Part shown: positions 30,495 through 64,000 of the stretch, piece by piece | How positions within the stretch are numbered: the first letter of the stretch is position 1 | Layout: each line of letters begins with the position of its first letter | NCBI GenBank assembly: GCA_051294905.1 | Contig: CM119381.1 | Location: 21,824,001 to 21,888,000, forward strand | Source: Botryllus schlosseri | Taxonomy: Eukaryota | Reading direction: 5' to 3' | DNA length: 64,000 nucleotides | Made by a program: the position numbers and the translations under genes | The notes under the pieces: model-generated | What the model was told of the DNA's origin: nothing | Databases searched by the model: none | What the model saw: only the letters and a program-made list of their open reading frames with translations

Positions 30495-30547
30495 TCATAA
30501 TCCCATTCACCAATTCCATCCAACGCTATTTTACTGAACCTCCCAAT

Positions 30548-34675: not shown

Positions 34676-34769
34676 TTACATAACGACGCATTTTTCTTGG
34701 TCTTGATCGAATACTTTCGGGATGTTTTCGTTCAGGCTCGTCTGCACGTGCATGTCGTCTTCCAACGCC
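34676..34769 (-). CDS. EHBP1: EHBP1 last coding exon: (M)ALEDDMHVQTSLNENIPKVFDQDQEKCVVM*
   Basis: Acceptor tctcgctttcgcag, 94 nt, TAA at 34676-34678. Ends in the CaaX box CVVM. EHBP1 proteins end in a CaaX box (human KCVLQ), which favours EHBP1 over MICAL/MICAL-L. Confidence 0.9.
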
Positions 34770-35410: not shown

Positions 35411-35525
35411 ATCTGCTCGTTCTCGCCAATCTGCTGACACAAACGGTCTCTTTCGTTGACCAACGCCACCAGCTCGTCCAGAAGCGAGGCCTCTTGCTCT
35501 TTATGGGCTTCGGTTTTGAGAGATT
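35411..35525 (-). CDS. EHBP1: EHBP1 exon, bMERB helix 3: (E)SLKTEAHKEQEASLLDELVALVNERDRLCQQIGENEQ(M)
   Basis: Acceptor gtgcatttag, donor GTAAGT, 115 nt (phase 1 to 2). LLDELVALVNxRD is essentially identical to the EHBP1 motif LLLDELVALVNKRD. Confidence 0.95.
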
Positions 35526-36736: not shown

Positions 36737-37110
36737 TACGGCTTGAGGAAAATCGAGTGAATGTGTGTTCAATCCTGAAGCGAGTATATTAGACATCGGG
36801 TCGAGTCAAATATCACTCATTGTAACGTCATAAGAGTATGAAAGATGTGGAACGTTCAAATATGTACCTTTATCCAACCACAAAGAATATAGTACCAGTT
36901 GTACACCGCGTAAAGGTAATTTGTAGCCTTATAATTCATGTTCCACATGCTTTGATACGACCAATCGAAGTTTCAAGGCCTCCGCAGTGCAAAATACTAT
37001 CGAAACTACAATTTTCTTTGACAGGTTACCTTTTAGTGGCATGCGGCGTACGAGATCAGTACTCGACAAAATAGTCTCTCGCTGTGCTCGAATCATTGTA
37101 TCCACCCCTA
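36737..37110 (-). mobile_element. Old inverted copy 3 of the TAGGGCTGGGC MITE family, in an EHBP1 intron
   Basis: Reverse complement aligns to the internal blocks of copies 1 and 2. Termini are eroded. Flanks AGGACGAC vs ACGATGAC (6/8). Confidence 0.7.
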
Positions 37111-37440
37111 ACGATGACCAACAGTATACGCGTAGAATCGACTGATCTATTTTTATTTCGTCGAATTTCATCCTTGAAAAAGACCCGCCGAACCACGCCG
37201 ATTACTTCACCCACACGCCAGTAACTAACGACAATCGAAAGCGTACGGATCACAGCATTAAAACAACACAAACGTGAACAGCTTGATAACCACAGCGCGC
37301 GTACGGCAATATAGACAGGCCGCGTGTACCGTGACAAGAAGAATAGTTTCTTATCTGGGTGGGCTGCGGGTTGAATAGAAAAGCTAGTTGTAACCCACCC
37401 CGACGATACAGTACGAACATATCGCACGCAGAGTTAAATT

Positions 37441-38161
37441 TAATCCCATTAATACGAATTCACGAGAACGGGACTGCGCCAGTAAGGCAAGCGACACCGG
37501 TAATAGGCTTAGAGCCAGATCTGAAGGCTCGATTGCCACTGAATATATTGCCTCGCCGAGGCCCGTTCTTAATTTCGTTAGTCGAGGATTAAAAGGCGAT
37601 TAGGTTGACATGGACAGTCCGGTAGCAGATGCCAGCCCAAAGCCGCGATACTGCCAAGTTTGGGGCAGATATACTAGAATTACGCCTTGTAACCCGGCGG
37701 ATAAGCCTGGATTTTCGGGCTCAAGGAATCAGCGAGCGCGCAGCCGCGCTCTCGAAAGACGCGCGCGTTTATCCCATTATTCGGCCTAAGCCTATATTCT
37801 TAATAACCGCAATCTTGTCTAGAATTTCGAAACGCAAGATCTCAGACCTTGCACGGCCGCATTGCGGGCAGAATTGTTTGGCAACAATTCGCATTTCATT
37901 ACGGAACGCTAATTATCGTGTAATTAAAGGCTTAGGCCAGCCCGGTCTATCGTAAGCCCAAATTAGCCTCGACATTGTGCGGGCTGCAACCGCCGACGAC
38001 AAGTGCGAGTATCGCCGACATACGGAGCGGACAGGCCTGGAAAATCGCGACATTCGCGTATCTGACCCGGAGCAGAAAACAGGATTAAATTCGCCCGGAA
38101 TTTCGTTCGGTTTCGGAGCCCTTTTCAATCCGGCGGGTGCCTAGCGCGCTGAAACTAAGCC
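37441..38161. promoter_or_regulatory. Candidate intronic enhancer rich in K50-homeodomain sites
   Basis: Three TAATCC/GGATTA, six TAAGCC/GGCTTA and two TAATTA sites in ~720 bp of CpG-rich non-coding DNA. Confidence 0.35.
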
Positions 38162-38417
38162 TATTATAGCAACCGTTAGCAGCGACAGCCGTTTGTTATT
38201 TGGAACGATGCGCGCGCAGTTTAATGAAAATCTTCGGAAACTAACACTGTCACGGTTCAACTGTGACGTCATAACGGTATAAATTGATTTATGCTCGACA
38301 ACTCATTTGGCGCCTCTCGGCTGACGACCGACTAATAAATCCAACACTACGGCAATGTTCGGATTCTTGAATTTAATGGAGTTTGGAATAAAGCCGCTCT
38401 TTGCGCATGATAGCGTG

Positions 38418-38585
38418 CGACACTTCGGGATGCAACACACGAGCATGTGGGTTAAATTACGGGTTACGGTAAGGCTTAGGGTTAGGATATAGGGGTTAAT
38501 TTCATGGCTATGTTTCGGATTAGGGTTAGTTGTTGGTTTATAAAGTCACATGCTGAAGTGGCGCACGCAGAGGTGTCCCATGCTC
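38418..38585. repeat. Degenerate telomere-like (GGTTAG/TTAGGG) hexamer tract inside short inverted motifs; probable non-autonomous element remnant
   Basis: GGGTTAAATTACGGGTTACGGTAAGGCTTAGGGTTAGG...ATTAGGGTTAG, flanked by GACACTTC/GAGGTGTC and GAGCATG/CATGCTC inverted pairs. Confidence 0.4.
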
Positions 38586-40167
38586 ATTGCTCAACTGTCG
38601 TTTTCTATTGTGTCGCATGCTCAATGCTCATATGTCGGTCAACCCTTCTTTGTGACTGCCAAAACGCTGTAAAATTAGTTGGAAGTTGGGACACTAGTCC
38701 GAAGAGAGGTTTTATTCCCGTTAATGCATCGTTTCTGTGACTGATCCAATGGTATATTTCGCAGAAGATAAATTTCCGAAAACAAAGCCTCTCAAAACAT
38801 TCAGTTTTTGCAGTTCCAGAAAATAGAAGGAAGAGCTCTTTCGGCCTAGTGCCTGAAGCAGAATGTAAAACAGCGAGAAAGCCGGCCCGCATCAAACCCA
38901 ACACATCAAGTGGGATTACTCCGCTCACTTGCTGCGTCACTCATCGAAAGCGCCGCCTCGACACAGAACCGACAACAAACACGCTGACTCACGACGCGCA
39001 AACTTGCGCGCGACACGCAAATCCCGCTCCCACAGCCCGCGGACCCCACAAGACTCGCCAGAACGCAGAGAACACAGATCAGAAGAGGCCGTTTTTGATG
39101 TCGGATCAAAATAGGGGAGGCGGAGACAGATTGTCTTGGTTTCTGACAGATGTTGCATCGCTATTTTTACGGGCGAAGTCGGCTTACATCAGGTGGGCTA
39201 TAGTGACGGGCGTAAAAAACAACAGGAGGTATTCCGTAATACCGTAGGGTACCGCTACTGCGCGCGCAGGCGCATTGAGCGCGCGTACCGCGGAATCATT
39301 GCCTTGCCTTGACCATGGAAAGCGAGGATGCCAAATCAGGCGTCGCGGCCAACACATTGCATTGAATATTACGCTTCGAGTCGAGTTTCCGTTACACACG
39401 GGCAAGCTATTATATTTATCTTCCATTCAACCTCAAATGATATATATCCAATTCAACTTCAACAGAAATAAATAAATTTCCTACGTGTCTGCCCTAAATA
39501 TGACATAACGCATGGCAGCGGTGCTGCCTGACCGCTACATCAAAGAAATGTCGAGAAATCAATAACGCAAAGGCACCGGTCTATAATACGACATCAAGAT
39601 GGATCAGATAGAAACTGTGAAAATCCCCAAAAGAGCGATTACTATAATCTTCCGCCCGTGTGGATTCCCTTACATTCACCACTAGCCTAGAAGCGATGCC
39701 TATACTACAAATCCGCAGCGCCGCATTAACTTAACATAAGCGGCTATTAAGGAAAGCAAACACGATCAGATAATACCGGCTACTTATCGCGTTAATCCCG
39801 ACGATAACAATGCGCCCCGACCCGAAACAGCTGAGTTTCAGAGCCGCCGTCACGACAAACTATCCCGGAATAGCTAAATTATTAATCATCCGCCGGCCGA
39901 GGGCGAAAAGTTGCCAACAACCTCGAGACTTATCGGCAATTAGCGGGATTTCGCTAATTCGAGATAAAGGCACGCGAACGATACGATGATTCACGATCTC
40001 ATTGGATCAGAATAAGAGTGGATTTGGATTTTTAAATGTTCTAACCGGGGTCGGATTTACGATGACTAGTGCCGACCCGGTTTAGCGCCTGCATGGCTAG
40101 GGAACTTGGGATGACATTCAACATGCACCCGATTTTCATACACATTTTGGTCGCAAAACAGGAATTC

Positions 40168-40580
40168 GAAATTAAATTTCTACACAAGTGCAAGTAGAGT
40201 TTGGGATATCCAAGTAAGTACTGAGTATTCTAGGTCCATAGTTTTGTTTAAAAAACGGAGAACAGAGATAGAAGTAAATTAAAATAATAGCCACTTGAGT
40301 CAGCAGAGTAAAGAAACAAACCTAAGCCTAAAACTAAGTCTAAAACTAAGCCTAAATCTAAGCCTAAACCTGAGCCAAAGCCTAAGTAAGTATTCTGGGC
40401 CTGGTTTTGCCCGAAAAACTGGAGACTGTGACGTGGAAGTACAATTTTTAGTCGCTATAAGTCCGCATTGAATATACACAGAGGTTATAAAAACAGTCAT
40501 CGTCGGTACCAGAGCAAAGGCGTACGTAGCGATTTCCAAGTACGTTTAAAAGTGAGTATTCTAGGCCTATAGTTTCGCCT
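40168..40580 (+). repeat. Diverged tandem triplication with ~165-bp period, containing a degenerate (CCTAAR)n tract
   Basis: The motif GTATTCT(A/G)GG recurs at 40225, 40390 and 40556. The sequence after it (GTTTTG...AAAAAC(T)GGAGA...GAAGTA(C)AATT) also aligns between units 1 and 2. Confidence 0.7.
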
Positions 40581-40818
40581 ATAAGTTATGCACGTTGATA
40601 AAAAGTAAAGCTATTTCGTTACTGGCCACCTTTGAAAGTATAATCAATCAGAACACTAATACAACAAAAGCAGCACAGCTTGTACAAGGTGTAAAGGGTT
40701 GCAGGTGAATTTCATCGGCACGAAAACCAATCAATAACTAACATCTGTCGACCCGCGCGGTCACGTCTGCGCGCGATCGGCGTCAGGTCGAGTTCAAAGG
40801 CACGCGAAACGCACAAAC

Positions 40819-40892
40819 CTTCCGTTTCCATGAACGGCCGCAGTCGCTTATTAACTTCCGCCATCTGCTTGTTCAGATCGTACTCTTGCTCC
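40819..40892 (-). CDS. EHBP1: EHBP1 exon: (K)EQEYDLNKQMAEVNKRLRPFMETE(E)
   Basis: Acceptor ttttcgtttttccag, donor GTTTGT, 74 nt (phase 2 to 1). Aligns to human EHBP1 EKEHDLERRYELLNRELRAMLAIE (sequence recalled, not searched). Phases match both neighbouring exons. Confidence 0.9.
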
Positions 40893-41309
40893 CTGGAAAA
40901 ACGAAAACGCGCTGTGAAGAAATACGTTTCGGAATACGCCACAACAGATACCGCTTGCGACGCCTGCTTTAGCGTTGAGTAGCGGGGAATAGTTGACCTC
41001 CGCCAGCTATCGACACTAGTGTGATTTTTTCGCGTACCGACACGGCTAAGATATTCCAGAACTGGTGTGATTTTTGACGCGATCGAAATATCCACAAGCG
41101 TCGTTTACAGTTTCTGAACTCACCACTTGCACGCGTGTGGCGAGCCTTATGTGCCTAAGTCGTTTTTTTGTACACGGTTAACACCATGGGTTGAGCCGCG
41201 CATCAGCTTAATGTGCTCTTCTAGCGGCCCTATTGCTTCCAAATGTACGTTTGAGTTGTTTATAGTAGTAGTATAATGCAAAAATGTGTATTAACGGAGC
41301 CATGTGTAC

Positions 41310-41630
41310 TGGGGTAGCTCAAAAATAACCTTTTCCTTCAACTTTTTCTGGCTAGTTGATCAAATTGTTGGGTTGACGAAGAAACGCTGCACAACAAATT
41401 TGGCCCAATTCCGACCTGCTGAAGAAAACAATTAGAATTCGAAAATTTTAAATTTATTAAAAAAATTATTTAATCTTTGCTGGTGACCCCATGAAATTGT
41501 TCAGTTGCATAAAAGAAACATACATAACAAATTTGTCACAATCCCAACCGATAGAAGAGACGTTATCGGATTACAAAATATCGGATTTGAAAAAGCAGTA
41601 TTTATGGTGGAAAATTCTTTAATTATTAAC
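41310..41630. mobile_element. Second copy of the 32144-32470 repeat family
   Basis: Block-wise similarity to 32144-32470. Boundaries are approximate. Confidence 0.55.
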
Positions 41631-42138
41631 GTGTTTATTTTCAAATCGCCGCCGAGGAAATCTGGCACACACAATCCACCACATGAAGCTAGTCGACTAT
41701 TCTCACTGTCATTAACTTTCTACTGCAGTAGTTGTGGAACATTGTGACGCCCGCGACCAATTTAGCCGCAACCACGCGCGCGAAACGGACAGAATCATAT
41801 CTTTTCAGCGACGAATAGTGTATTACGTTCGCGCATGCGACCGCCAAGGCCGCCGCGGATAATTGCGACCCGCCGCGCATGAATAAGTGAACGGCCACGT
41901 CAAAAGGCACACCGTGGGACACGGCTTTGCACTTCTACATAATTTAATAACCGCGTACGCGTTCGATTGTTACACGTATCGTTGGCCTGGCAGGAAAAAA
42001 AGCGCTGGGAAAAGCGCGGGATATACGGAATAGTTCAAAAACAAACCCTCCTGTGCGAGAGTGCGCAGGTGTAGCCAGAGGGGGCTGGCAAATGCGTGCT
42101 TGGCACCCACAAGTTTCAGATTTTCAGAATTCTATAGG

Positions 42139-42372
42139 TAGAGATTGTTAGTAACAAAGTACTTCTACATTTCGGAGTACTCAAGTAGGCTTCAAGCACT
42201 CGGCACTCCCATACTCAAGCGCACGGTTTTGATTTCATACAACTCCCACTTCTACTCAACAGTTTTCAGTTTTTTAGCAAAACTCGCGTCGAAATACTTA
42301 ATTTTCGACCAATCCAGAAATCGTTACCTTTTACTACTAGAGTATTAATGAATACAATATCGATCACCTCTG
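42139..42372. mobile_element. Degraded hAT-like MITE, AAGTACTTCTAC family
   Basis: AAAGTACTTCTAC...GGAGTACT block shared with 57778 and 63782. Right end CGATCACCTCTG is the reverse complement of the CAGAGGTG start at 63782. No TSD. Confidence 0.5.
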
Positions 42373-42433
42373 ATTTTGGGACACGTTAGTTCGTGACGTC
42401 AGAGTATATATGACCTCACTTCACCGTTTAAAT

Positions 42434-42723
42434 CAGCGATTCTCAAAGCGGGCGCCATCGCCCCCCCTCCCCTGTGGGCGATTTTGAGAAACGGGGCTAA
42501 AATAACAAAGGTGCGATTGGGGGCGAAAATGTTACAATGTCCAGTCATATATACTCGAAAATTACCCGGCAACCAGCGCAAAACACAGGTGAAAATAAGA
42601 AAGCGTTTTAAACAAGGTCCATATTCCAAACATGTTTGTTTTACATTGATTTTTTAAATGCAACCCAAGTATATGTCGAGCTTGGTAAGGGGAAGATGAA
42701 TCGAAGAAGGTTGGGAACAACTG
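42434..42723. mobile_element. Degraded Charlie-type hAT MITE
   Basis: Ends CAGCGATTCTCAAA / TTGGGAACAACTG resemble CAGTGGTTC(T/C)CAA. Subterminal CGCCCCC motifs. TSD not recoverable. Confidence 0.6.
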
Positions 42724-43197
42724 GCGTTTATGTTTCGTCAATCTTCACAGTATAGCACAGAGTCAGTATTGCGGAATACCGCCTCAATCATGAAACATAA
42801 TCCAAGCGCCTAAATCTATAGTTGGGGTCGCCATACAGAGCTTATATCTAAGATTTATCTTTGTTCTAAAAGGCGACGCCTCAGTCTATAAAACTATATT
42901 GTCCTGATTTCTATGATTTGTCAATAATTTCGACTATTGCCCATAGCATGTCTTATTTTCGTCAATGAGGCCGCGATTAGTTCTGTGGGCGAAAGTTATG
43001 ACCTTTTTTTAGTCAACAGTTTACAAATTTCACGGTCAGGCTACTCAGCGTTTATAGCTGTCCCAAGCGTTTGATAGAAGCCGATGGTAATGGCAGCCAT
43101 ACCTATAGTATCACGAAGACCCTGTTCCCATAAAATTATCGCTCCCTACTCTGCGCCGTATCGTAGTCTGTTACATCACTAGACACGCATCACTTAC

Positions 43198-43303
43198 TTC
43201 AACTCTAACAGGTCCTGCTGCCGCACGATCGCGTTTTTCTTCTGCACCATCTGGAACCATTCCTGCTCCAGGTCATCTTCTCTCTTCGGATCCTTCCCGC
43301 GGC
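43198..43303 (-). CDS. EHBP1: EHBP1 internal exon, bMERB helix 2: (G)RGKDPKREDDLEQEWFQMVQKKNAIVRQQDLLEL(K)
   Basis: Acceptor tctgcacgcgcag, donor GTAAGT, 106 nt (phase 1 to 2). The ExEWFxxVxKKNAxxR signature matches the bMERB domain of EHBP1/MICAL. Splices in frame to 40819-40892. Confidence 0.93.
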
Positions 43304-46300
43304 CTGCGCGTGCAGAGACAAGATTCACGAGCCTGATGGCACCGATCATCGCCGATCAAGTCGACCGAAATGAGGGAGAAAGTTTGTATCAACAGAAACA
43401 TTCCGGGCGACGGAATCCGCAGACGACGCGAAGCGCGATGTTTTTGTAGCGCGGCCACACGCAGACCGCGCCGTTCCGATCGCGGGACGCGTGGATTTAC
43501 GATAACGCGGACGGAGACGGCCGGTGTAACGCGGGGAATGCAGGGACAATGTCCCGCGGGCTAGCGGCACAATTGAGCGTGGCCGTCGGACGATGTGGTC
43601 AAAGTGGGAATAGTTTGTGTTCGAACAGAAGTAGGAGTGATGACGTATATTGCTACTCAATTACAAGTAGAGATAGCGACGTCACAGACATGTCGAAACG
43701 GTACTTCAATGGGCGTCCAAAAAGGAAGACCCGGAAAATATTCGAGTAGTCTCAAAACGTTGATTTGCTAGACGGGTCGCGTACTTGTATCACTCAATCA
43801 GAGATTTCGAAGTTGCAAGACGTAAAATCACCGTTGACGCCACAAATGGGCGCAGTTTCCACAAATGTATTCAGTCACGATGGTAGGGGGGTTATTTCGC
43901 ACGCTGTCAATGACGATTTCACCCGTGAAAGCCATGCGAACATATGCTGAACCCATTTTCTGCTTTACGAAATACAGATTGAATGAAGGAATATTTTCAC
44001 CTGAAAATTGTTCTGGTAGAAGTAGAAGTAGTCAACGAACGTAAATATACTTGAGTAAGCAGAACATGTACGCAAAATCTGGCCCAGTACTACGATGAAG
44101 TAGACGTACTTCATTACTGCTCGCCTTAGGCGGTCGAACAGGCTTCTGGTGATTGAGTATTTGCAAGATAGGTACTTCACGCCCAAATCGAATCACGACT
44201 CTATCCCCTAAAAGTAGCATTTCAACGATTTCGATGGCGCTGAAGATGGGTTTAGGGTTCGGGTCGTAATTGCGACCCGGGGGCTACATCAAGACTAATC
44301 CCTCGCCACAAATACCACCCGCATGAAGACGATGTACGCAAGATATACATCGCAAGATTCCGCGATTCGAAGCCAAAAAATCGACACGAATCACGGCGAG
44401 TTTGTTCAACGTCCGTCAGCCGTACACAACCCACCATAAATTACATTTTTCACCGTTTGTACACCCCCAACCGACCGCGACGCGCTAAATCAATACCGAT
44501 TCCATAACAGCGCGCGGTGGGACGCACGAAAACAAAAGCCCTCGACGCTGCGCCTCAGTCACGAAACACGAGACAGCCGTCAAACTGTGTTTTCAAGCGA
44601 TAAGAACATGACGAATCGCCCGGCCGTCGAGTGCGCCGCAACGCAATCGGGATGACACTCGAAAGACGGAAGTGGCAAATTTCCGATGGGAACACCGTTC
44701 GGGTGAAGCAACCGATCGATATTGTTTACAATATCAATGGGCCGTTGAAGTGCGGAGAGTGACAAGTGTAGGTCGGTTGAAATCGTTGGCATATTGTTCG
44801 GATCCAAAATAAACCCGGGCCGAAGCGTAGGCCGTCGCGGTAAAGTGCCGTGGGAAAAGACAACACCGTTTTTGTGTCCCTGCGAGCAGGCGAGGGCCGG
44901 ATGAGACGTATTCCAGCCCGCGGAATAGCTTTTTGATGAAATTGCACTTGACTGAGGTACCCGTGTGAGGAAAGATGCGGGTTTCCTTGTGTAAACCACT
45001 TTAATTTAGCATTTCTACGCAGACGGGCGGGCGTCGCCGCGCTTCGGTTCCCACGAATGCCCTACCTCACTGCTCTGGTCAAATTCTGGCCAAATAACGA
45101 AAGTAAAGCACGCTTTGGTAACTAAGCGGCGATTCGTACAACCGCAGGACATCCCAAGCGAGAAATATCATGAAATATCGCAGACTTGGCATTCCCACGG
45201 ATATTTACTATTTGACGGCTGATTAGTGATTATCTATAATTCACGCGTGGACGCCTCCTTTCACGATCGTTCGGAAATGTCAAGGGATTGATTCCCGCGA
45301 TTGATTATTGTGTCAAATATCTTCAACCTGTGCGCGTTGGTTCGCAACTGTAGAAGTCAGATTGCAGAATGCAATGCGGTTCTTAACATCGCCATCCTGA
45401 AACCAAGCTGTTTCGCCCATTTGACTTTGATTTGATGTTATATTCGCCACCACTGTTTTCCTATCTCAAGACAATGTCAATAAGAACCCGCAATCAATGT
45501 TGGCGCTACAAACGCGTTAAACAACGAGGTTCACATATTTGTTCCCAATCAATGGCAAACGAAATCATAACAGACCGGAGAATTAACGATCTAAACCGAA
45601 GATTACCGTATTTTCAACTCCCCAAAGCGTCCACAAGCGAGAGAACGCGTACTATTTTCAGGGAAAACAAGCGATCCGAATTAACTCAAGAGCCGAAATG
45701 AATGCTTTGACAAAAAAAAGGCGGTGAATCGACAGATACCCGGGGAAACCTACAACAAAACCAATGCGCATCGTCAAAGAACGCTAAACCGAATCTCGGA
45801 TCGTCTAGGCGCGCTGACCGATTACCCGTCATCAAGCCCTAAAACAATTGTTACCTGTCTAAATAATGCATTGATACCGCGACTCGGCTAATCGCGTTAA
45901 TAAAGAATAATCCGTAAGAAAAGAGCTCTCGCGACCGCCGTCAAACGTGGGAAAACTATGACGAATGACCCCGAAGAGGGATTTCAAGAGCGGTTTATCC
46001 ATGCAAGTGCCTTTTCATTCCCGTCGAATGGGGGATACTCTAGCGTCTACCCGCAGGACCGCTGCTCAGCGCGAATGTTACAAATTACGTACGACAATCA
46101 ACACGGACCCATGAACTTACATATTAATGACAATATATAAGAAGTTCACATCAGACACCTCCCTATGGTTATCGGGAATCACGTATCAGCATCAGTTTAT
46201 TTATAATTTCAACACATCGAAACATCACAAGATTTTTATACAATGAAAAGATAGGAACTAAGGAAGATGTCAAAACGACTTGAAGTTATCTTTTAATCAG

Positions 46301-51819: not shown

Positions 51820-51873
51820 AATTGAATAGTATATTCATATTGAAATATTTCAATATGAATATACCATTCAATT
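51820..51873. repeat. 54-bp AT-rich palindrome with a perfect 34-bp core
   Basis: TATATTCATATTGAAAT|ATTTCAATATGAATATA (51830-51863) is a perfect palindrome. The 10-bp flanks pair with one mismatch. Confidence 0.9.
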
Positions 51874-54800: not shown

Positions 54801-56985
54801 TAGGATCAAATGCGCGCCGCGCCTACATTACGGGCGATACTTCGCCGAATTAGCGCGTGAGTTTATATTGACACTTGTGCCTAATGAAAGACGCGACAAC
54901 AATCACGACGGCGAGTCAACAAGATCTCAAACGGATCGCTGGAAGATGACGTGGCCGCGTACGCACGCGCTGATCCTCCAAAACAGAAGGTGGGGAAATA
55001 TCCCCAACTCAAACAGAGCGACAAAGTCTCCTTATGTGCGTAGCGAATTACGGCATTACTGACTCGCTAAAAACCCGACAAGAGCAATACAATACAAACA
55101 GGAACACGGGCTGGGAGAACACAAGTCAGAATCCTATGTAGTCAACGCTTCCGACAATTCATCCTGAGAATGACGATGGGCCTCGTTCGGCCACGAGCCC
55201 AGGCACAAAATCAGTAACGTAGCGCGGTCCACCTTCGAGATACGGCAAAGATCCCGTGTAGAATTTGATAACATGAGTCAAGCAGATCACCTTGGAAAAC
55301 CTTCGTTCCAGTCTACAACAATCAAAATCGACTCCAAGAAACTACACTGCTACGACCTATATGTTTCAAGGTCGTAATCGACTTGATGTGAGTGGCGAAG
55401 AAATAACTAAAGGTCCACGGTCCACTGTCCAGTGCTTTCGTAAATAAGGCGAGAAATTCATCACCCTTAACAGCCCAGGTGTGTAGGATATTGTAAAATG
55501 CTTTCCATAGGTTCAATAACGCACCGACGTAACGCGGCTCCCACAAAAGCCATCCAAAGGAAACACATCGCCACAAATCTTCGACACAGCATTGTACGCG
55601 GGCAACTTTCGACGAACTTGTGTACGTTGCGGACAATCATCAGTGACGACACACTGTTTGATAAGGGTTTACCGGGTCTCCGCATGTTTGACATCACACG
55701 TCACAGCCTACATGACCAAAGTACGTGTGGAAGGGATTTTAATATCCATCCAACTGAGGCGTGGAGCGGGACGCCTCCGTTCTGATCACGGCCGATTTAT
55801 TTTCCAAAGAGATTAAGGCACGGGAGCGCGCCGGCGTTTTCCATTCTCGCCCGAACCCTTCAATACATCTCATCACAAGGCATTGTGTGTGGTCCCCGGG
55901 CTTTTCAACACAAAACGCGAAGTTAACAATAGGGAACTAAGAAAGAAAAGTATATTACATTATCTCGAGGAAGTCGTTTTCGCCTGCCGCCAAGTCTCTG
56001 TATCATTTCGGAACCAACTACGTTTTAAATAAATCCCATGCAGCCCGAAGGCTGGCGAGGGGTCGCCGAAATTTTCCAGCCTGTAATGATGTGAAGCTGT
56101 TCGACCACCGACGACACGCATGCCCCGGATTAGAAAGATTAACAGTGTGATCCGAATTGCTGACATGACTTAAATCGGCAGGGGTCTCTATGGATGATAA
56201 TCCGAAAGGGAATTTGCATATCCGAGTCTCGTACACCAAACATACATTAGACTGATTAGAGTAACTACTATTTTCAGGAGATTCATGCAAGTATAGCCAC
56301 CTTGTCCAAGGCGTGATAATTGCGGACAACCGATGTCAAAACGGACCACCGAAGTCGCTATCCGCGAAAAGGTCGCCTCCGATTTTATGGTGTCACACGC
56401 GATTACAAGAATCCCTAATTCGACGCGATTAAAAGCAATCTCTCCACGACAAAGTACGAGTCCCGCGCGTTCCTGCTTTACTGCATGCGCCGCCGTGACT
56501 CATTTCGAGCGTTCCGCGCATTTTAGGAGATGCATATCATATCGGATGGACTCCCCTCGCCCGGCGAGTGAACAAACACAACCCTACACGATATTTAAGC
56601 GAAGCTTGTTTTACCCCACACATCATCTAGCCATTCGGCTGAAAGCGGTCAGAAAAAAGGTCACCTCGGATGGACAGGGGAGTCGAATTACCAGCCGGTG
56701 CAGAAAGCGTGACCGAGATTATACAAATTGCAGACGAAGCGGCTTGCTAACTTCAAACGGCCTCCATATAGCAAATTTTTTGCTTCTTCATCTTTACTCA
56801 TTTTCTCCGCATTCCAAACCTAACGTGGGCGACTCAATTATATATCAACCGGGACAGGGAAATTGGACATACATATAGCGAAATTTGACATCACATTTTT
56901 GCCCAAGTTCTTTGTTATGAATATAGAGGTAATAATAAGCGATTCCAGTAGATATCATTGAGCCACATACGGCAAAGATGCATAC

Positions 56986-57179
56986 TGCTAATTTTTCTGG
57001 GTCATTGGATATGTAACAGCGTTACGTGCCAATCCAGATCCTATGGAAATGACCTATGTACACTGGGTACATACATATCGTACTAATTGCTAATTTTTCT
57101 GGGCCATTGGATATGTAACAGCGTTACGTGCCAATCCAGATCCAACGGACGTGACCTGTGTACATACATATCGTACTAA
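56986..57179 (+). repeat. Two-copy tandem duplication, unit ~102 bp
   Basis: TGCTAATTTTTCTGGG(T/C)CATTGGATATGTAACAGCGTTACGTGCCAATCCAGATCC... starts at 56986 and 57088. Confidence 0.92.
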
Positions 57180-57329
57180 GGCTTGGAATTCTCACGTTCG
57201 ACAACCGTGTTTACGCCACACACCGGAAAAAACATGAAATTCCACATTGCCGAAGCCAGCATAGAAACAACGATCGTCCTCACACAACCACAGGAAATTG
57301 ACGCGGGGGCCCGCTATGTTTTCATTTAC

Positions 57330-57344
57330 CTTGTGTTTCGGCGA
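57330..57344 (-). CDS. Candidate 15-nt alternative microexon of EHBP1 (TCGCCGAAACACAAG)
   Basis: Acceptor cttcgtcttattctag, donor AAG|GTAAAT, branch-point-like TACTGAC at 57405-57411. Length is a multiple of 3 and the phase-1 reading (V)AETQ(G) is open. No transcript evidence. Confidence 0.3.
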
Positions 57345-57777
57345 CTAGAATAAGACGAAGCGCTTTCTCACGCGATCGCTAGCAACCATCCCCACGATGA
57401 GTCGGTCAGTAAGTGGTTTAATCCAGCAGGGACCCCTTGATCATCGCTCCCGGGTCTATTTGCCCAATTCATTTTCTATGCATCGTGCACCGGGATGAAA
57501 AGGCGGGGCTCGGCCGTTCCCGTGTGTCATAACGACGAGAAATCAGAGAGCCGAAGTGCGAGTCGGTTTATGAAAGCACATCTCCGTCGACTTGTGAATG
57601 TAAACAGCAATTTGCTTCGCTTCGCTGCCGCGAATCAAGAACCGCGTGCCGAGACACGGTGCTAGACAAGAGGAACCACACGGTCAGTTTGCGGTGTTTG
57701 GTAGTTCTTGTTTACGGAAATACAGACTGGCCAGTCGTGCATAGTGGAGCGTCCGGGGAGAACTTATGAGTATTAGG

Positions 57778-58225
57778 CGGAGGTGGTCGGTGACAAAGTA
57801 GAAAGTACTTCTACTGCTGTTGCGGAGTACTGAAGTACGTTTGTCTGCTTGCAATGCCTACTCTAGTGGGTGTTTTTATATGCCGAAACAGTTTTTAAGG
57901 CGCAACTGCTAGCTTTTCACACATTGGCGTAGGGCTGAGCTTGCGCCAATTTCACGAATGCAATCGTCGTGAGAAATGGGTAAAATTGGGGCACCAATTC
58001 ACAGTGTCTTTCGTCATTTTACGTGGGATGACGCACTCTGCGACTTGGAAAGTAGCCCATGCTAAGAGTATTCGGTATCTCGACCAAATACGATTTTTGA
58101 AACTACTTGGGTACTTTTCACCCTTTCAATCATGTTGTTTCGACATGTCTCGGAAATCACTAGCTCTACTTGCCATGTATTGATATTTAAAACGTTACTA
58201 TAAGCCTACTTGAGTACCAACCCTG
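57778..58225. mobile_element. Degraded MITE, AAGTACTTCTAC family, possibly with a nested fragment
   Basis: Starts CGGAGGTGGTCGG...AAAGTACTTCTACT and ends GAGTACCAACCCTG. No TSD. Confidence 0.5.
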
Positions 58226-60147
58226 AATACATTGACCAACTCTGGTATTCAGAACTTGGGTATTTCATAGCAGGCTAGCCTGGTGAGTTTGCCCGGGATT
58301 GAAATGTAAAAGGCGGAACATATGTGCTTGGTAACAAACCAATATCTTCCCTCTCATGGAGAGGTCTAGATATGATATCCAGATGTGACAGAATCTCCAG
58401 TATTAAGCGCTGTCTACCCTTTTTCAAACAACGCCTCAGTCGCTTACTGCGCCAACGATGCATCGTCCGGCGTAATGAGAGCTATTTTCAGTTATCAAAC
58501 AGCGCAGTATCCATTATTCGGCGCTAAGCTGCAGAAAACAGCTATACATGCAACATCGCCTTCCATTAGCGCCTTGCCAAGAAGATTTGAATCTCTAATC
58601 CGACCTGATATGAGAACGGTACGCAAAGGCGAATCGAATCTTGATAGATTTCCAAGAATTGTTGAACGTAGAGAGGTCAAAACGTCCCTCATTAAATCGA
58701 AAATTGAAATTCATCACTAATCTAGTTTCACTCTAGATTCAATTCATAGGAATTCCATCGCGCGCATTTTAAAGTTAGTCCAAGAAGCAGTTCGCAACTA
58801 TGTCCACCGACGCCATCTAGCGGTTGGCGTAAAACGCGGTCACTTATTACGAAATAACACACATCGACAAGCACTCGATTTCGTTTTCAGTCGTGCGGCG
58901 TACGGCCACGAATCGACATATCACCGACACCGAAAGCACTTCGTGTTTGACACCTTTGTAAACAAAAGATAAAAGGCTTCAAAACCGTGTTATCAGTGGC
59001 AAGACCAAAGAATTGGGACCCGGTTTTTCGGCGACGATTACCGCCAATTAGCGTTATCTCGGGAGCGGGCGTCTGCGACCGTACAGTCGTTGGCACGACC
59101 ACATGATAAAATCTTAAAAGCGTCGGATGAAGGTCGAGATTAGGGTACGTGTCGGGGTATGATTGAGTCTTTGCAACGCAGTCGACATTAAAATGGCGAA
59201 CTGATGCATTCGATACCACACGAAATTCTCTCGGAGCTAAATTTTGACTGCGCATAAACGCAAGTTTTATAAGTAGATCCAATGCGGCCACGCGATATAT
59301 TGATTTAGATATCAGTGTGAATATAACGTATCGGGTAAAAGGATGATTATATCACATCGGAAAGTTACACGAAGAAAACCGATGACTTCACAAAACGCGT
59401 AATTTTTGTTCTACTCAAGTCCGGAGCCGACATATACGAAAATAACCGGGATCGCCGGACCGGGAAAGGGTTAATTTTACGGCGCGGTCTCAAATGCCAT
59501 TTTTTCGCCGCGGGATCGCGCGGCTAGTAACAATTTAATCGCGGAAAAATACGATAAGGAGTAAATGGCCGCACTCACGCGATCGGTAATTGGGCGCGGA
59601 ACGAAAAAGGGACGCCAAAAAAATAGGTGTTATCCGCCATTTTGTTTCTAGCCAGCGAGAAAACTCAAAAATCCATGCAATCGCGCCAGGGAGACTCACG
59701 TTCGTGCCAACATTGCATTGGATATATCCGTGTTTCACGGACATCTCAACGATGATCAGAAAAATTGCCAGAAATCGGAAGGTACACGGGCACGCTGCTA
59801 TGAATAACTACAGTGACTTTCATATTACGCAAAAATCACAAACATATTACTGCTTAGCTTTTGTAATCTGATTATAGTACGCAGCGTGCGGAAAACAACA
59901 TTGGTCCATCAGAAATACCACACTTTCACACTGATCACAGCAGATTTGTGGCGACAATTGTCATAATGATCATCGCGTAACGGCCAGAACAACAAAAAAT
60001 CGTATTATTCAAAACTGCATCCGCGGTACCTACCAGCAATTCGTACGCACGCAAGCTGTCAGGCAAACCGTATCTGCATCTCTTGCGTTAAAATCCATTG
60101 AGAATAATTCCAGATATCGCGTCACACGCGATGTAGCACGACACCCA

Positions 60148-61001
60148 TAATCCAACAGCAAGGAAGCATCTGACAGCCCCGCACACCTTTCCCGCATTGG
60201 CAAACCACAACTCTACATCGTGTAATCAATCCCGGCCCGATATATACTCGGGTAGCATCCGTAATCCGTCAGAAAATCCTCATGAGATACCTTCGCACGA
60301 AATTTGTAAGGCGCATCTTAGCGCGGATCCCAGAAGGCCTAATCCGACTTTCTCTGACATAAATACCTTCCCTTTTACCGTCGCGTCACCCACGACAAGG
60401 CCGGGCACGGCCGGAGCGGCTGCGCAAAATCCCATCAGCCCTGTAATCTCGCGCTTTCCATTAAATCTGCGATGGCATTATGCGCCTTTCTTCGACTCAG
60501 GTGGTTATTTTGTTTGGGTTTTTGCCCGGGAAAAAAAGATTTGCGTCTTCCCCCGGCTTCATTTTGTCTTAATTTTTAATCTGGCGATTACGGAGAATTA
60601 TAGGATTCAGTTTTCAAGGCCGCGACGCAGTGTTCCCATCGTTTCCGAAATACAGTTTTTACAAATCGATTTCTCAAAGACTCTCAAGCCTGTCGTGAAA
60701 CATAGTGATCAAACGTTAAAAACAACACGTCGGATGATTGAAAATACATCAGTTTGGCATCAAAAAACGATCCGCTTCGAATAGCAGTGTCGCCGGGATC
60801 ATGAAATGAATTCAGGGGTTCGGACGGTGGTTTTGATGATTTTGTAGCAGGGTTTGTATGTTGTGACACCTGTAAGGCGATAAGGAGATGAAGGCCGTCG
60901 ATAGCCGGCAGAAGCCGGATTATCCTTGACATTGCGCGTCTTCCATTGATAGGAATCGTGTAGTTAGTGTTTCGTCATAGGCGAAATTCGATGACGGATT
61001 A
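60148..61001. promoter_or_regulatory. Candidate intronic enhancer with clustered TAATCC sites
   Basis: TAATCC/GGATTA at 60148, 60262, 60340, 60917 and 60996; TAATCT at 60444 and 60577. Confidence 0.35.
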
Positions 61002-63559
61002 ATATCAAACGCGCGCGCCGAGCCCTGGGTTATAATCAATAAGTATTGGCTTAGTAAGATACCACCAACTGTGTAGTACATTGACTTTACAGTTCCTATT
61101 GAACTTCAGCAATCGAGATTAGTTAATCTCATTAAACCGTGGAGCTAAAGCACGACACGCTATTGCTGAAAGGTGAAAAGCTTTCGAAATTGAGTAAACG
61201 TTTCGGAAATTAATAAAAAGGCGGCACATGAAGACTCGACACAACGGCGAACTTGTTTCGCAGCCAAGAGTTTCACCGTAAAAATAGTTTCCACCCGATT
61301 TCTCGAGTTAAACACATCGGCCCGTCGCAGATTTACGATCGTAATCGCATAATAATTCGTACCAAACCTTTTAACAAATCGGGTACATCCTTTTACTTGT
61401 AAACGTGGTTGCCATCGACATGGATCAAATTTCAAGGACAGCCAACAATTCCGAATAGCCTAACGACGGAATTTGGGTGCTGATTACTGAGAAAGGTCGC
61501 CACTTTCGCGCAGGCCTCTTCATTAGCAGTCGGAGTGCAGTTATAAGTGTTCGTGTTAGTGTGGCTTGTGGCCTGTGGTGAGCACTGAGAATAAGACCAA
61601 GGTCGACTCTAGAATCCATACCTAAGCGTTGGGGGTTTATCTAGGCTCCCCGGCAGATGCGGAATCATAATAAAGCATGACCGGCCTGGTGTAAATAACC
61701 ATCGCAGTCGAAAAACACCATGAACGCCACAAGCAGCAACGAGAATAAGCCAAAATCAAGACAAATGTTATAAATAAGGACGATGTAGATTTGAAAACAT
61801 AGCCCTTCAAAATAGACAGATCTTGTAAAGAAGGACGGTATGGCAAACCTACCCAATGCCCATGCAAGTTATTTGTGGGAGAGGAACCACAATTAGCCAG
61901 AGAACAACCAGAAGATGGAGAAAACTCGAAAACCATGCCCGGACACCAATCCAACAGTGTCAGTCAAAGGGTAACATCGACGCAACCAATTGACACGCTA
62001 TGCATCAAAAGACGGCGGTCGTTACCACCCTTTCACGTTGTCAAACGCTTGACAACACAGACAAGACAAGAATGCCAACGCCAACGCCGCAAAAACGCAT
62101 CCAGCCCACTGCGCCGCGCCGGGCGCGGTTTTCCAATCCAAAAATACGGGTGGCAAGCATCAGACTACGCGAGTATTGTCTCAGGTAATCCCTTAATCGG
62201 CTTAGCCGCGCGCAAAAGACTTCGTAATAAATTGAAGGGGGGTTACCGGATCGGGCGCGAGCGTCGTTACTCTCCCTGGGGGGCAAAGAAATCTCGGTAG
62301 TCGGAATACGAACGGACAAGCGAAGCGTTCCGCGAATCAGGAGTTGGCAAACGACGGGCTGCGCGCCCACGATCTCGGCCGCCATTTTATCTGCGCACAG
62401 ATCGCGTAAGCCGGCCGGGGAACTGCCAATTACTGTCGCCCGGACGCGGGGAATAAATTCGCGAGACATAGCCTCATAAATAAATAAATACGCGGCCCCG
62501 ATATAGGCATACCCGGGCGCTTTCTTAACAAGATCAAAAGGGCCACGCCTCGATGTTGCGAGTCGATAAAAAGCGTCGGGAAGACGCCGCGTCTGGATCG
62601 CGGGTATCGTACATATTTCAAACGAATTACAAGTCTATATGGATGTGATTGAAACATGTAGTTTTCAGCGTGTCAAATGAATTGGATAATACCTATCACG
62701 GAAGATCACGACCATCCTTCCCAGGACTGTATTAACAAGGTCCCAGAGGGGATCTCGCGTGGGCGTTACGGGGATCTTGCTCCCGTCAATAATACCAGAT
62801 TATGAACAGTCCGAAATCGATCTATTTCAGCCGCTAATTGTGTTTACAGGATTGCCAGTATCGCTTATGAATCTCTGTAAATCCCAGACGGACAGATATC
62901 GTGAAGCACATGCACGATTTCATCGCTACTATAACTTTATTTCAGAGGAAAATACCTTATTCGTTAAAAAAAAGTTGACAAAAGGAACCACTTTCGTGTC
63001 ATTGTAAGCACTTCCACACCGCGACAAAGGCGACAGGAACCGCTGCTTTGTTGGCGTCGCGTGTCTGAGCTGATGTGCCGCGACAATGTCCAGAGTGCAT
63101 ACTTCAGATGGGGCTAGAGGGCGTCATTTTTGGACACGTCCATTAGGACGGGTGCTGTTTCTGATGCGCTAAGCGCCACAAAATCCCCGCATGCCTTCTC
63201 TTTACATCGCCCAGGCCCAGATGGGTGTCTGCTTTCAAAGACTACTCCAAGTGGTTACGAAACCTCTCTACCTTTTCATTGTATCGCAGTCTTGTAGTGT
63301 ATTGAAATGATTAAATTACTAATAACGAGACCCTGATGCTGTAGCGAGTGTTAGCAAGGTCCAGAAACATTTCACGCCGAAGCGCAATGCTCAAGTACGC
63401 CGTAAATATGCAGTCGATTGCAGAGCATGCGCATCGTGCGGAAAGTTGGCGGATAACGACCGCATCCTGACCGCGATCCAATCAACTTTCCCGCCAAAAC
63501 ACCATCGCGGCGCGATATTCGAATGAGCGAATGTATAATGTATATACTTAGCCCGCGTG

Positions 63560-63595
63560 AGATAAACGGATTATCTCCCGGATATGACGCCGGAA
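63560..63595. promoter_or_regulatory. Candidate GATA+ETS composite element
   Basis: AGATAA-ACGGAT-TATCT-CCCGGATATGACG-CCGGAA: two or three GATA cores and three (A/C)CGGA(A/T) ETS cores in 36 bp. Confidence 0.3.
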
Positions 63596-63781
63596 ACTGC
63601 GCGGGTGCCCACGCCGCAAAGACGAAACGGGGTTCTTCCTCGAGAAACCTGGCCTCCGCGCGAAATCGCGAGAAGCGATTAGGGTGGTCGCGGAGGCGAT
63701 TTATTTACGCGTTCAACGGAAAGCAACAAACAGATTACCGTTACGAGGGTGCGTCTCCGACTTTGCGGTGTGTATTCTCTA

Positions 63782-63870
63782 CAGAGGTGGTCAGAAACGA
63801 AGTACTTCTACTTTTTCGGGACACTGAACTGGGTTTCGTCTACTTGAACTAAATACCCAAGTACTTGTGA
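63782..63870. mobile_element. Fragment of the AAGTACTTCTAC MITE family
   Basis: CAGAGGTGGTCAGAAACGAAGTACTTCTACT matches the starts of the 57778 and 42139 copies. Confidence 0.45.
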
Positions 63871-64000
63871 TTTTAAACTAATTTCAATTCTAATCAACGG
63901 TTTTCAGATTTTGACCAAAACTAGGGTACGTATCATTTCACTTAGTTGGAAATCTGCGATCGCTACGACTACGTTACTTCTAAGCCTCCGTCTCCAAGTC

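What the first reader, a model, noticed from the sequence alone, without database searches (positions are those of the whole stretch)
37100..64000. CpG-rich EHBP1 introns look like an Otx-type genomic regulatory block
Seen: EHBP1 exons of 74-115 nt are separated by introns of 0.6, 5.3 and 2.3 kb, and I found no further identifiable exon in >20 kb above 43303. The region is CpG-rich (spot count: about 20 CG in 43381-43500 vs 3 in 10801-11100). It has no MITE with a perfect TSD, whereas the left half has five, and it holds several TF-site clusters. Known: EHBP1 neighbours OTX1 in vertebrates, and Otx-Ehbp1 is a reported ancient microsyntenic pair in which the bystander gene's introns hold Otx enhancers. 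Inference: these introns are an unmethylated, insertion-intolerant enhancer landscape for a nearby developmental gene.
Basis: partly seen in the sequence, partly recalled or inferred. Interest (0 to 1): 0.7.

Follow-up and report, generated by a model that had tools for sequence, protein, structure and literature searches.

The report
Otx control region inside EHBP1 introns
The CpG-rich stretch is the 3' half of a sea squirt's EHBP1 gene, mostly one 21-kb intron lying just upstream of the head-patterning gene Otx, and comparison with a second sea squirt shows conserved non-coding elements there, so it is very probably part of the ancient Otx-EHBP1 regulatory block already known from vertebrates and amphioxus.

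Summary
The window comes from a stolidobranch ascidian. EHBP1 lies on the minus strand (24 exons, window 34,676 to about 98,142). Its last exons are 97, 106, 74, 115 and 94 nt, and its last introns are 21,221, 2,305, 5,293 and 641 nt. RNA contigs join 43,303 directly to 64,525, so 43,304-64,524 is one intron.

A K50 Otx gene lies just left of the window, about 41.8 kb downstream of the EHBP1 stop on the same strand. That is the vertebrate EHBP1-OTX1 arrangement.

Window 36,001-67,500 is a coherent CpG-rich domain (o/e 1.35 against 1.06 around it). It has no coding-like ORFs and few young repeats.

In Styela clava the two genes have the same order, strand and spacing (39.4 kb). The orthologous intron is 22.1 kb, although S. 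clava's other introns total half of ours. CpG o/e switches at the same exon (0.55 to 1.19). At least seven colinear conserved non-coding blocks lie in the big intron, against essentially none in the 5' introns.

The genomic-regulatory-block reading is supported. Enhancer activity, Otx as the target and the methylation state are inferred, not shown. It is a new member of a known kind; the added feature is the conserved switch in CpG depletion inside the gene.

The parts
34676..34769 (-). EHBP1 last coding exon, ending ...EKCVVM plus TAA stop (CaaX-type end)
   Evidence: tblastn of ortholog P0036; splice sites and in-frame spliced translation
35411..35525 (-). EHBP1 exon (115 nt), bMERB domain
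   Evidence: 71% identical to the S. clava exon at L030:54424-54546
40819..40892 (-). EHBP1 exon (74 nt), bMERB domain
   Evidence: the loose end of the RNA contigs at 43197 reads into this exon
43198..43303 (-). EHBP1 exon (106 nt), bMERB profile positions 31-60
   Evidence: Pfam PF12130, 27.2 bits; RNA-type contigs of runs X17, X19 and X5 at depth 42-77, with both splice junctions
43304..64000 (-). In-window part of the 21,221-nt intron (43304-64524). It is the longest EHBP1 intron, four times the next longest, and splits the bMERB domain.
   Evidence: P0036 residues 1344|1345 are contiguous across it; the junction is seen in RNA contigs; no Pfam hit in the 10 longest ORFs, and ORF lengths are near shuffle expectation; no Rfam family or tRNA; the S. 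clava orthologous intron is 22,058 nt
36001..64000 (.). In-window part of the CpG-rich (not CpG-depleted) domain 36001-67500: CpG o/e 1.35, GC 0.45-0.46, 17 CpG-dense patches
50558..50646 (-). Strongest conserved non-coding element: 83% over 89 nt to S. clava L030:44308-44395, with a 32-nt perfect core. It lies 7.3 kb (ours) and 6.9 kb (S. clava) upstream of the next exon.
   Evidence: single copy in this genome; no stable RNA fold (z = +1.8). It is flanked by AG ... GTAAGC in both species, so a 41-nt cassette exon is not excluded.
60853..60959 (-). Conserved non-coding element: 72% over 111 nt, E 2.6e-11. It holds a perfectly conserved GGATAATCCGG (K50/Otx-type site) and conserved GATA words.
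   Evidence: 59500-61000 is single copy in this genome
60548..60608 (-). Conserved non-coding element: 75% over 63 nt, with conserved inverted TAATC / GATTA half-sites
59529..59645 (-). Conserved non-coding element: 66% over 119 nt, E 2.7e-5
51305..51449 (-). Weaker colinear conserved block: 61% over 153 nt, 35.4 bits (null maximum 29.7)
45939..46017 (-). Weaker colinear conserved block: 70% over 83 nt, 35.4 bits
44823..44866 (-). Conserved non-coding element: 80% over 44 nt. It lies 1.5 kb (ours) and 1.6 kb (S. clava) from the next exon.
38078..38171 (-). Conserved non-coding element in the 5.3-kb intron: 67% over 104 nt, with a conserved TTTAATCCTGTT
25886..25996 (-). Colinear conserved block in the EHBP1-Otx intergenic region: 67% over 120 nt. 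It lies 8.7 kb (ours) and 7.5 kb (S. clava) downstream of the EHBP1 stop.
1..34675 (.). In-window part of the EHBP1-Otx intergenic region. It carries MITEs, has CpG o/e 1.14, no CpG-dense patch and no coding-like ORF. The Otx ATG lies at about -7.1 kb.

Best explanation
The region 36-64 kb, continuing to 67.5 kb beyond the window, is the 3' half of the bystander gene EHBP1. It is dominated by one 21.2-kb intron inside the bMERB-coding part. It belongs to the cis-regulatory landscape of the neighbouring Otx gene, that is, to the ancient Otx-EHBP1 genomic regulatory block.

Proposed mechanism: short conserved elements in these introns act as long-range enhancers, looping 43-75 kb to the Otx promoter downstream on the same strand. 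Some of them carry K50-homeodomain and GATA-type words. Because the block is occupied regulatory chromatin, it would escape the germline gene-body methylation that depletes CpG in the 5' half of EHBP1 and in the housekeeping neighbours. It also tolerates few new insertions or length changes.

Shown here: the gene models, the synteny, the CpG domain, the conserved intron length, and the colinear conserved elements.

Inferred: enhancer activity, Otx as the target, and the unmethylated state.
For: Gene models.
- EHBP1 has 24 colinear exons against the full-length ascidian ortholog P0036, which carries NT-C2, CH and bMERB domains and ends in CVVM.
- Its 3' exons are exact. The 64525|43303 junction is seen in RNA-type contigs of three runs.

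Neighbour.
- Otx has a K50 homeodomain and a WKFQVL end, and its best hits are ascidian Otx.
- It lies about 41.8 kb downstream of EHBP1 on the same strand, with nothing coding-like between.

S. clava synteny.
- EHBP1 (P0157) and Otx (P0002) sit on the same contig and strand, 39.4 kb apart.
- The orthologous intron is 22,058 nt against 21,221 nt here. The remaining introns sum to 18.3 kb against 38.2 kb.

CpG.
- Domain 36001-67500 has o/e 1.35 against 1.06 outside; LLR 39.3 against at most 19.2 in permutations.
- The effect is CpG-specific and mirrored by lower TpG/CpA.
- In S. clava the 5' part of the gene has o/e 0.55 (TpG/CpA 1.25) and the big intron 1.19. The switch falls at the same exons.

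Conservation.
- Seven intron-to-intron hits exceed the reversed-sequence null, and all are colinear with offsets of at most about 1.2 kb.
- One more lies in the 5.3-kb intron, one in the intergenic region and three upstream of Otx.
- In the 5' half, the strong colinear hits are all exons.
- The tested elements are single copy in this genome.

Literature.
[quoted passage not shown] An ehbp1-intron enhancer drives an Otx-like pattern and contacts the otx1b promoter in zebrafish (PMC3514665).
- An Otx-Ehbp1 contact is reported in amphioxus (PMC7530604).
- Sharp methylated and unmethylated domains are described in Ciona (PMC3827831).
Against: - There is no direct evidence of enhancer activity, chromatin accessibility, promoter contact or methylation state. 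CpG o/e is only a proxy.
- The Otx gene and the 38-kb intergenic region have lower CpG o/e (1.14-1.16) than the intron. The domain is therefore not simply an extension of a uniform Otx domain.
- The contrast in this genome (0.98 vs 1.35) is much weaker than in S. clava.
- The conserved elements could serve EHBP1 itself.
- The best element is flanked by AG...GTAAGC in both species and could be a cassette exon.
- One run shows intronic RNA-like coverage at about a quarter of exon depth.
- Word counts for GATA and ETS are at expectation, and the TAATCC/Fox excess is weak.
- Old repeats are present in the domain.
- The linkage could not be checked in Ciona: EHBP1 is not within 10 kb of its Otx, and no Ciona EHBP1 protein was retrieved.
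Confidence: 0.62

Rival explanations
1. The conserved elements and the special chromatin of the 3' introns serve EHBP1 itself or another neighbour, not Otx. Examples are tissue-specific enhancers, an internal promoter, or splicing control of the bMERB exons.
For: The elements lie inside EHBP1. CpG-dense patches could mark internal promoters. One run shows intronic RNA-like contigs (43738-45980 at depth 16.9 against 68.6 on the exon).
Against: The same pair of genes in the same order is kept in S. clava and widely in animals, with tested Otx enhancers in ehbp1 introns (PMC3514665). Two elements keep perfect K50/Otx-type TAATCC sites. Housekeeping-type genes rarely need 20 kb of constrained intron.
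Confidence: 0.15
2. Some conserved blocks are transcribed parts rather than enhancers. In particular, 50558-50646 may contain a 41-nt alternative ('poison') cassette exon that shifts the frame before the bMERB domain. Alternatively, the intron may host a non-coding RNA.
For: AG ... GTAAGC flank the 41-nt core in both species. The core is open in the phase-1 frame of the intron. Low-level intronic RNA-like contigs exist.
Against: The pyrimidine tract before the AG is weak in both species, and conservation runs about 40 nt past the putative donor. There is no stable RNA fold and no Rfam family. Raw RNA reads gave no intronic signal, but at very low depth. This reading cannot account for the other six or more blocks, the CpG switch or the length conservation.
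Confidence: 0.12
3. The domain is a neutral compositional feature with no regulatory role: a GC-biased gene conversion tract, an old TE-poor sequence, or a generic property of large introns in this genome.
For: GC is higher in the domain (0.456 vs about 0.40). CpG o/e there exceeds even the Otx region. Another unverified scan note reports a CpG-enriched ORF-less domain in a large FAK intron of the same genome.
Against: The switch sits at the same exon in S. clava, where GC stays low (0.36) and the contrast is 0.55 vs 1.19. Intron length and internal spacing are conserved while the other introns doubled. Colinear conserved blocks are confined to this part of the gene. The domain is not made of diverged tandem or dispersed repeats.
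Confidence: 0.06

Closest known systems
otx1b-ehbp1 genomic regulatory block of zebrafish and other animals (Irimia et al. 2012, PMC3514665)
   Same: A trans-dev gene (Otx) sits next to the bystander EHBP1. The bystander has very long introns, and those introns carry conserved non-coding elements. EHBP1's 3' end faces Otx's 5' end on the same strand. From my own memory, not checked here, this is also the arrangement of human EHBP1 and OTX1.
   Different: Here everything is about ten times more compact: a 21-kb intron and a 42-kb spacer. The conservation was measured between two ascidians only. No histone marks, 3C or reporter data exist for this locus.
Otx-Ehbp1 contacts in amphioxus, and Otx1/2 gene deserts in vertebrates (Touceda-Suarez et al. 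2020, PMC7530604)
   Same: An invertebrate chordate keeps the pair, with Otx-promoter contacts reaching into the Ehbp1 locus.
   Different: That work rests on 4C data. Here only the sequence signatures were available.
Mosaic gene-body methylation domains of Ciona (Suzuki et al. 2013, PMC3827831)
   Same: There are two classes of sequence, CpG-depleted (methylated-type) and non-depleted, with sharp borders. Constitutive genes belong to the depleted class and tissue-specific genes and intergenic DNA to the other.
   Different: In Ciona the borders are described at the ends of transcription units, and genes fall into fully methylated or unmethylated classes. Here the border lies inside one transcription unit, at the same exon in two species.
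Other bystander/trans-dev pairs noted by this scan in the same genome (WWOX-Maf, Scaper-Islet)
   Same: An expanded 3' intron of a bystander gene lies next to a developmental transcription-factor gene.
   Different: Those are unchecked notes on other windows. CpG and conservation there were not examined by me.

Membership tests
Genomic regulatory block (criteria of Irimia et al. 2012) | A trans-dev gene paired with a non-developmental bystander gene | tested here: met
   Otx (K50 homeodomain) lies next to EHBP1 (NT-C2/CH/bMERB), with no coding-like ORF between them.
Genomic regulatory block (criteria of Irimia et al. 2012) | [quoted passage not shown] | tested here: met
   The intron is 21,221 nt against at most 5,293 nt for the other 22 introns. 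The S. clava ortholog is 22,058 nt against at most 2,978 nt.
Genomic regulatory block (criteria of Irimia et al. 2012) | Short highly conserved non-coding regions in the bystander's introns | tested here: met
   At least 7 colinear blocks in the big intron and 1 in the 5.3-kb intron score above a reversed-sequence null. The best is 83% over 89 nt. Exons in the same comparison are 63-77% identical.
Genomic regulatory block (criteria of Irimia et al. 2012) | Conserved microsynteny of the pair across lineages | tested here: met
   S. clava has the same contig, strand and order, with 39.4 kb spacing against about 41.8 kb here. Ciona could not be checked. Wider conservation is taken from PMC3514665.
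Genomic regulatory block (criteria of Irimia et al. 2012) | Enhancers in the bystander's introns that act on the trans-dev gene | not testable with these tools
   No ATAC, histone, 3C/4C or reporter data could be reached. The conserved K50 and GATA words are only suggestive.
Germline-unmethylated domain of a mosaic-methylated invertebrate genome | No CpG depletion relative to neighbouring gene bodies, with the reciprocal TpG/CpA signal | tested here: met
   Here: CpG o/e 1.34-1.42 against 0.93-0.98, and TpG/CpA 0.95-1.01 against 1.13-1.14. S. clava: CpG o/e 1.19 against 0.55, and TpG/CpA 1.10 against 1.25.
Germline-unmethylated domain of a mosaic-methylated invertebrate genome | Direct absence of 5mC (bisulfite, EM-seq or CXXC capture) | not testable with these tools
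   No methylation data were available. The listed runs carry no library description.
EHBP1 protein family | NT-C2, CH and bMERB domains in that order, with a C-terminal CaaX | tested here: met
   CH exon 41.5 bits. bMERB exon 27.2 bits. The NT-C2 exon scores only 18.7 bits alone but aligns colinearly to P0036, which has all three domains. The spliced end is CVVM.
Otx/orthodenticle family | Paired-like homeodomain with lysine at position 50, and the Otx tail motif | tested here: met
   The homeodomain reads [48 protein letters not shown] | VWFKNRRAKCRQ, and the protein ends in PWKFQVL. It scores 53 bits on PF00046. Best hits are ascidian Otx at 57-82% identity. Pfam TF_Otx was not detected in it, nor is it listed for the ascidian Otx hits.

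The most novel reading that the evidence does not exclude
In ascidians the regulatory landscape of a developmental gene may override transcription-coupled gene-body methylation inside a neighbouring, constitutively transcribed bystander gene. This would produce a conserved methylation border within one transcription unit. Here the border falls at the exon before the giant intron, in two species whose coding exons in this comparison are only 63-77% identical at the DNA level. If this is general, a step in CpG o/e inside a gene would be a sequence-only detector of enhancer-bearing bystander introns in mosaic-methylated invertebrate genomes. It would also give a natural system for asking what excludes DNA methylation from transcribed DNA.
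Probability: 0.35. Interest if true: 0.7.

Novelty: new member of a known kind. Interest (0 to 1): 0.55.

Why it matters
Otx-EHBP1 is one of the textbook ancient bystander/trans-dev pairs. Tunicate genomes are heavily rearranged: Irimia et al. count only 54 conserved ancient pairs in Ciona. A retained pair with a length-conserved intron and colinear conserved elements is therefore good evidence that the linkage is held by cis-regulation. It also gives concrete, short candidate Otx enhancers to test in an animal group where electroporation assays are routine. The conserved intragenic step in CpG depletion is a cheap, sequence-only signature. If confirmed by methylome data, it would show that regulatory landscapes can exclude gene-body methylation from part of a transcribed gene.

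Tried and rejected
- Insect origin. High CpG o/e first suggested an insect, but protein hits show an ascidian.
- Whole-genome Pfam bMERB search. It missed the window's gene because its bMERB exons are small; an ortholog was needed.
- Apparent conserved element at 36013-36114. It matches DNA near S. clava Otx but is an interspersed repeat (1,713 first-look candidates, at least 39 copies at 82-86%), so it was rejected as a conserved element. It also showed that my local repeat mask underestimates repeats.
- Random genome sample for a CpG and repeat background. The background is therefore only the 220 kb of flanks.
- S. clava EHBP1 (P0038). Not on record; the look-up succeeded only through its cluster member P0157.
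- Ciona. EHBP1 is not within 10 kb of its Otx, and no Ciona EHBP1 was retrieved with the last protein search. Clavelina Otx is not on record.
- A third ascidian Otx contig (L028). It shares only exons with this genome.
- The closest relative's EHBP1 fragment (P0033). No DNA was available.
- Hidden genes or RNAs in the intron. No Pfam hit in the 10 longest ORFs, no Rfam family, no tRNA.
- Hyper-diverged or tandem repeats as the cause of the domain. Rejected.
- GATA, ETS, Zic, Sox, CRE and E2F word counts. All at expectation.
- Bulk RNA raw reads (X23). Only one read was laid, so they say nothing about intronic transcription.
- The literature library holds no paper linking bystander genes with gene-body methylation borders.

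Full report
**Where the window lies.** It is G000:C11:21824001-21888000 of a 495.5-Mb assembly. Protein hits identify a stolidobranch ascidian. The last exon of the neighbouring homeobox gene is 82% identical to an unnamed transcriptome protein, 65% to Styela clava OTX and 57% to Herdmania Otx.

**EHBP1 gene model.**
- EHBP1 is on the minus strand. Pfam scores that exon at 27.2 bits for PF12130.
- A CH exon and an NT-C2 exon lie beyond the window, at about 86.4 and 93.1 kb in window coordinates.
- A large linker exon (71354-72451) found the full-length ascidian ortholog P0036 (1,472 aa; NT-C2, CH and bMERB; ends CVVM).
- tblastn of P0036 places 24 colinear minus-strand exons from 98142 down to 34676.
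- Splice sites and the in-frame spliced translation fix the 3' exons at 64525-64621, 43198-43303, 40819-40892, 35411-35525 and 34676-34769. The introns between them are 21,221, 2,305, 5,293 and 641 nt.
- P0036 residues 1344|1345 are contiguous across 64525 to 43303. Contigs of three RNA-type runs carry exactly that junction and the next one.
The stretch is one intron, four times longer than any other intron of the gene.

**The intron shows no sign of hidden genes.**
- Its longest ORFs are barely above shuffle expectation (215 aa against at most 189 aa) and have no Pfam hit.
- There is no Rfam family and no tRNA.
- It is not built of tandem or diverged repeats.

**The neighbour is Otx.**
- A whole-genome homeodomain scan found an exon at C11:21816153-21816290(-), 7.8 kb left of the window.
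- It reads [48 protein letters not shown]. The next exon continues VWFKNRRAKCRQ (lysine 50) and ends PWKFQVL.
- The Otx ATG is at about -7.1 kb.
- The order on the minus strand is EHBP1 then Otx, about 41.8 kb from stop codon to ATG. No coding-like ORF lies in between.
- Irimia et al. report this pair as linked 'from placozoans to humans', with an ehbp1-intron enhancer that drives an Otx-like pattern and contacts the otx1b promoter in zebrafish (PMC3514665). Touceda-Suarez et al. report the contact in amphioxus (PMC7530604).

**CpG.**
- Over 284 kb assembled from the window and its flanks, CpG o/e is 1.34 in the big intron, 1.27 in 34.7-43.3 kb and 1.42 in 64.5-68.3 kb.
- It is 0.98 in the 5' half of EHBP1, 0.93 in the housekeeping-type genes beyond, and 1.14-1.16 in the intergenic region and Otx.
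- GpC does not follow this pattern, and TpG/CpA is reciprocally low.
- A scan for the best segment gives 36001-67500 (1.35 vs 1.06; LLR 39.3 vs at most 19.2 in 100 permutations).
- Seventeen CpG-dense patches of 300-700 bp lie between 37.7 and 67.3 kb, and none in the 48 kb to the left. CGCG-containing words are 3-8 times enriched.
- A tissue-type gene body at -120 to -92 kb has o/e 1.25. The domain is therefore best read as 'not depleted', and the 5' half of EHBP1 as mildly depleted.

**Repeats.**
- Inverted-repeat pairs of MITE type cluster in the left half. One has a perfect 8-bp target duplication (18345-18653). A 515-bp family (18812-19326) has at least 40 copies at about 91% identity.
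- First-look repeat candidates number 21,486 for 1-20 kb against 7,883 for 44-64 kb.
- Within the 284 kb, detectable repeats cover 5% of the big intron, 11% of the intergenic region and 29% of the 5' half of EHBP1. That mask is incomplete.
- Old SINE-like copies do sit in the domain: 35990-36140, 46183-46447 and 63189-63325.

**Comparison with Styela clava.**
- Through a cluster member (P0157) I obtained the whole S. clava EHBP1 locus (L030). It lies on the same contig and strand as S. clava Otx (L026), with 39.4 kb between the EHBP1 end and the Otx ATG.
- The orthologous intron, between the same bMERB exons, is 22,058 nt. All other S. clava introns are at most 3 kb and sum to 18.3 kb, against 38.2 kb here. 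The big intron kept its length (ratio 0.96) while the rest doubled.
- S. clava CpG o/e is 0.55 (TpG/CpA 1.25) over the 5' 19 kb of the gene. It jumps to 1.19 in the big intron, then 1.14 and 1.07 downstream and 1.21 upstream of Otx. The step falls within about 1 kb of the intron's 5' exons. The same exons mark the step here.
- Intron-against-intron alignment gives seven hits above the best score of a reversed-sequence null (29.7 bits). All are colinear, with offsets of at most about 1.2 kb: 60853-60959, 60548-60608, 59529-59645, 51305-51449, 50558-50646, 45939-46017 and 44823-44866.
- The best (50558-50646) is 83% identical over 89 nt with a 32-nt perfect core. Exons in the same comparison are 63-77% identical.
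- The best element, and the 1.5 kb holding three others, are single copy in this genome.
- Further colinear blocks lie in the 5.3-kb intron (38078-38171), in the intergenic region (25886-25996) and upstream of Otx (-2.9, -3.6 and -5.3 kb).
- In the 5' half of the gene, the strong colinear hits are all exons.
- Two elements keep perfect K50/Otx-type TAATCC words (GGATAATCCGG and TTTAATCCTGTT). One keeps inverted TAATC/GATTA half-sites, and several keep GATA words. This hints at autoregulation but is not a test.
- Domain-wide motif counts are at or near expectation.

**Reading.** The four sequence-level criteria of a genomic regulatory block are met:
- a trans-dev gene paired with a bystander;
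- a very long bystander intron;
- conserved non-coding elements in that intron;
- conserved linkage.

The functional criterion, enhancers acting on Otx, could not be tested. I put 0.62 on the regulatory-block reading.

Rivals:
- the elements serve EHBP1 itself (0.15);
- some are transcribed, notably a possible 41-nt cassette exon in the best element, which is flanked by AG...GTAAGC in both species but has a poor pyrimidine tract and no stable fold (0.12);
- the domain is a neutral compositional feature (0.06).

The neutral reading is hard to square with the shared step, the conserved length and the colinear blocks.

**Novelty.** The block itself is known, so this is a new member of a known kind. 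What I did not find described is the conserved step in CpG depletion inside one transcription unit. In Ciona, genes fall into fully methylated or unmethylated classes, with borders at gene ends (PMC3827831). If methylomes confirm the step, regulatory landscapes can exclude gene-body methylation from part of a transcribed bystander gene, and such steps would flag enhancer-bearing introns from sequence alone. Other notes of this scan report expanded 3' introns next to Maf and Islet in this genome. I did not check them.

**Limits.**
- Conservation rests on a single comparator species.
- Ciona could not be examined.
- The RNA evidence comes from contigs of uncertain library type, plus one raw read.

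Noticed in passing
window 18812-19326: 515-bp MITE with TAGGGCTGGGCA terminal inverted repeats. At least 40 copies at 89-92% identity are spread over the chromosomes. A related copy lies at 12012-12549.
   Followed up: partly
window 18345-18653: 309-bp MITE with CAGTGGTTCTCA inverted ends and a perfect 8-bp target duplication ACATAGAC, which looks hAT-like.
   Followed up: partly
window 35990-36140: SINE-like interspersed repeat of about 150 bp (1,713 first-look candidates, copies at 82-86%). About 70%-identical copies sit in tandem 3.4 kb downstream of S. clava Otx (L026:16363-16573), so the family predates the split of the two species.
   Followed up: partly
window 63189-63325 and 46183-46447: Another high-copy repeat of about 137 bp (at least 39 copies at 81-88%), with an older inverted copy in the same intron.
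   Followed up: partly
window 43738-45980 and 46941-48198: Run X5 (library type unknown) has contigs covering these intronic stretches at depth 17 and 9, against 69 on the exon. This could be nascent RNA, an intronic transcript or DNA carry-over.
   Followed up: no
window 43001-49000: Contigs of other samples differ from the reference at about 1.3-2.1% of intronic positions, and at 3-5 of roughly 100 exon positions. The species is highly polymorphic, or the samples are from a divergent lineage.
   Followed up: no
left of the window, about -2.9, -3.6 and -5.3 kb (loci L015/L007): Three colinear conserved blocks upstream of the Otx ATG are shared with S. clava (L026:5488-5562, 6055-6203, 7322-7445). 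They may be the promoter, a 5' UTR or proximal enhancers.
   Followed up: partly
right of the window, about 76-88 kb (loci L016, L008): The 5' introns of EHBP1 are 45-59% locally repeated sequence, in sharp contrast with the 3' introns.
   Followed up: partly
flanks: about 99.1-99.6 kb (-), 102.5-103.9 kb (+), -69 to -58 kb (-), -95 to -91 kb (-), 142.7-144.6 kb (-): By eye from ORF translations only: prefoldin-subunit-like, cysteine-desulfurase-like, MutS/MSH2-like, Na/Ca-exchanger-like (Calx-beta) and RPA70-like genes. The first, second and third sit in CpG-poorer DNA, and the exchanger sits in CpG-richer DNA.
   Followed up: no
window 40318-40387: Short (CCTAAG)n-type microsatellite. It accounts for the top enriched 8-mer, AGGCTTAG, in the domain.
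   Followed up: no
flank 144-160 kb: Tandemly repeated ORF-bearing units (about 470-bp spacing at 145.6, 146.0 and 148.1 kb) with very high local self-similarity and several CpG-dense patches.
   Followed up: no
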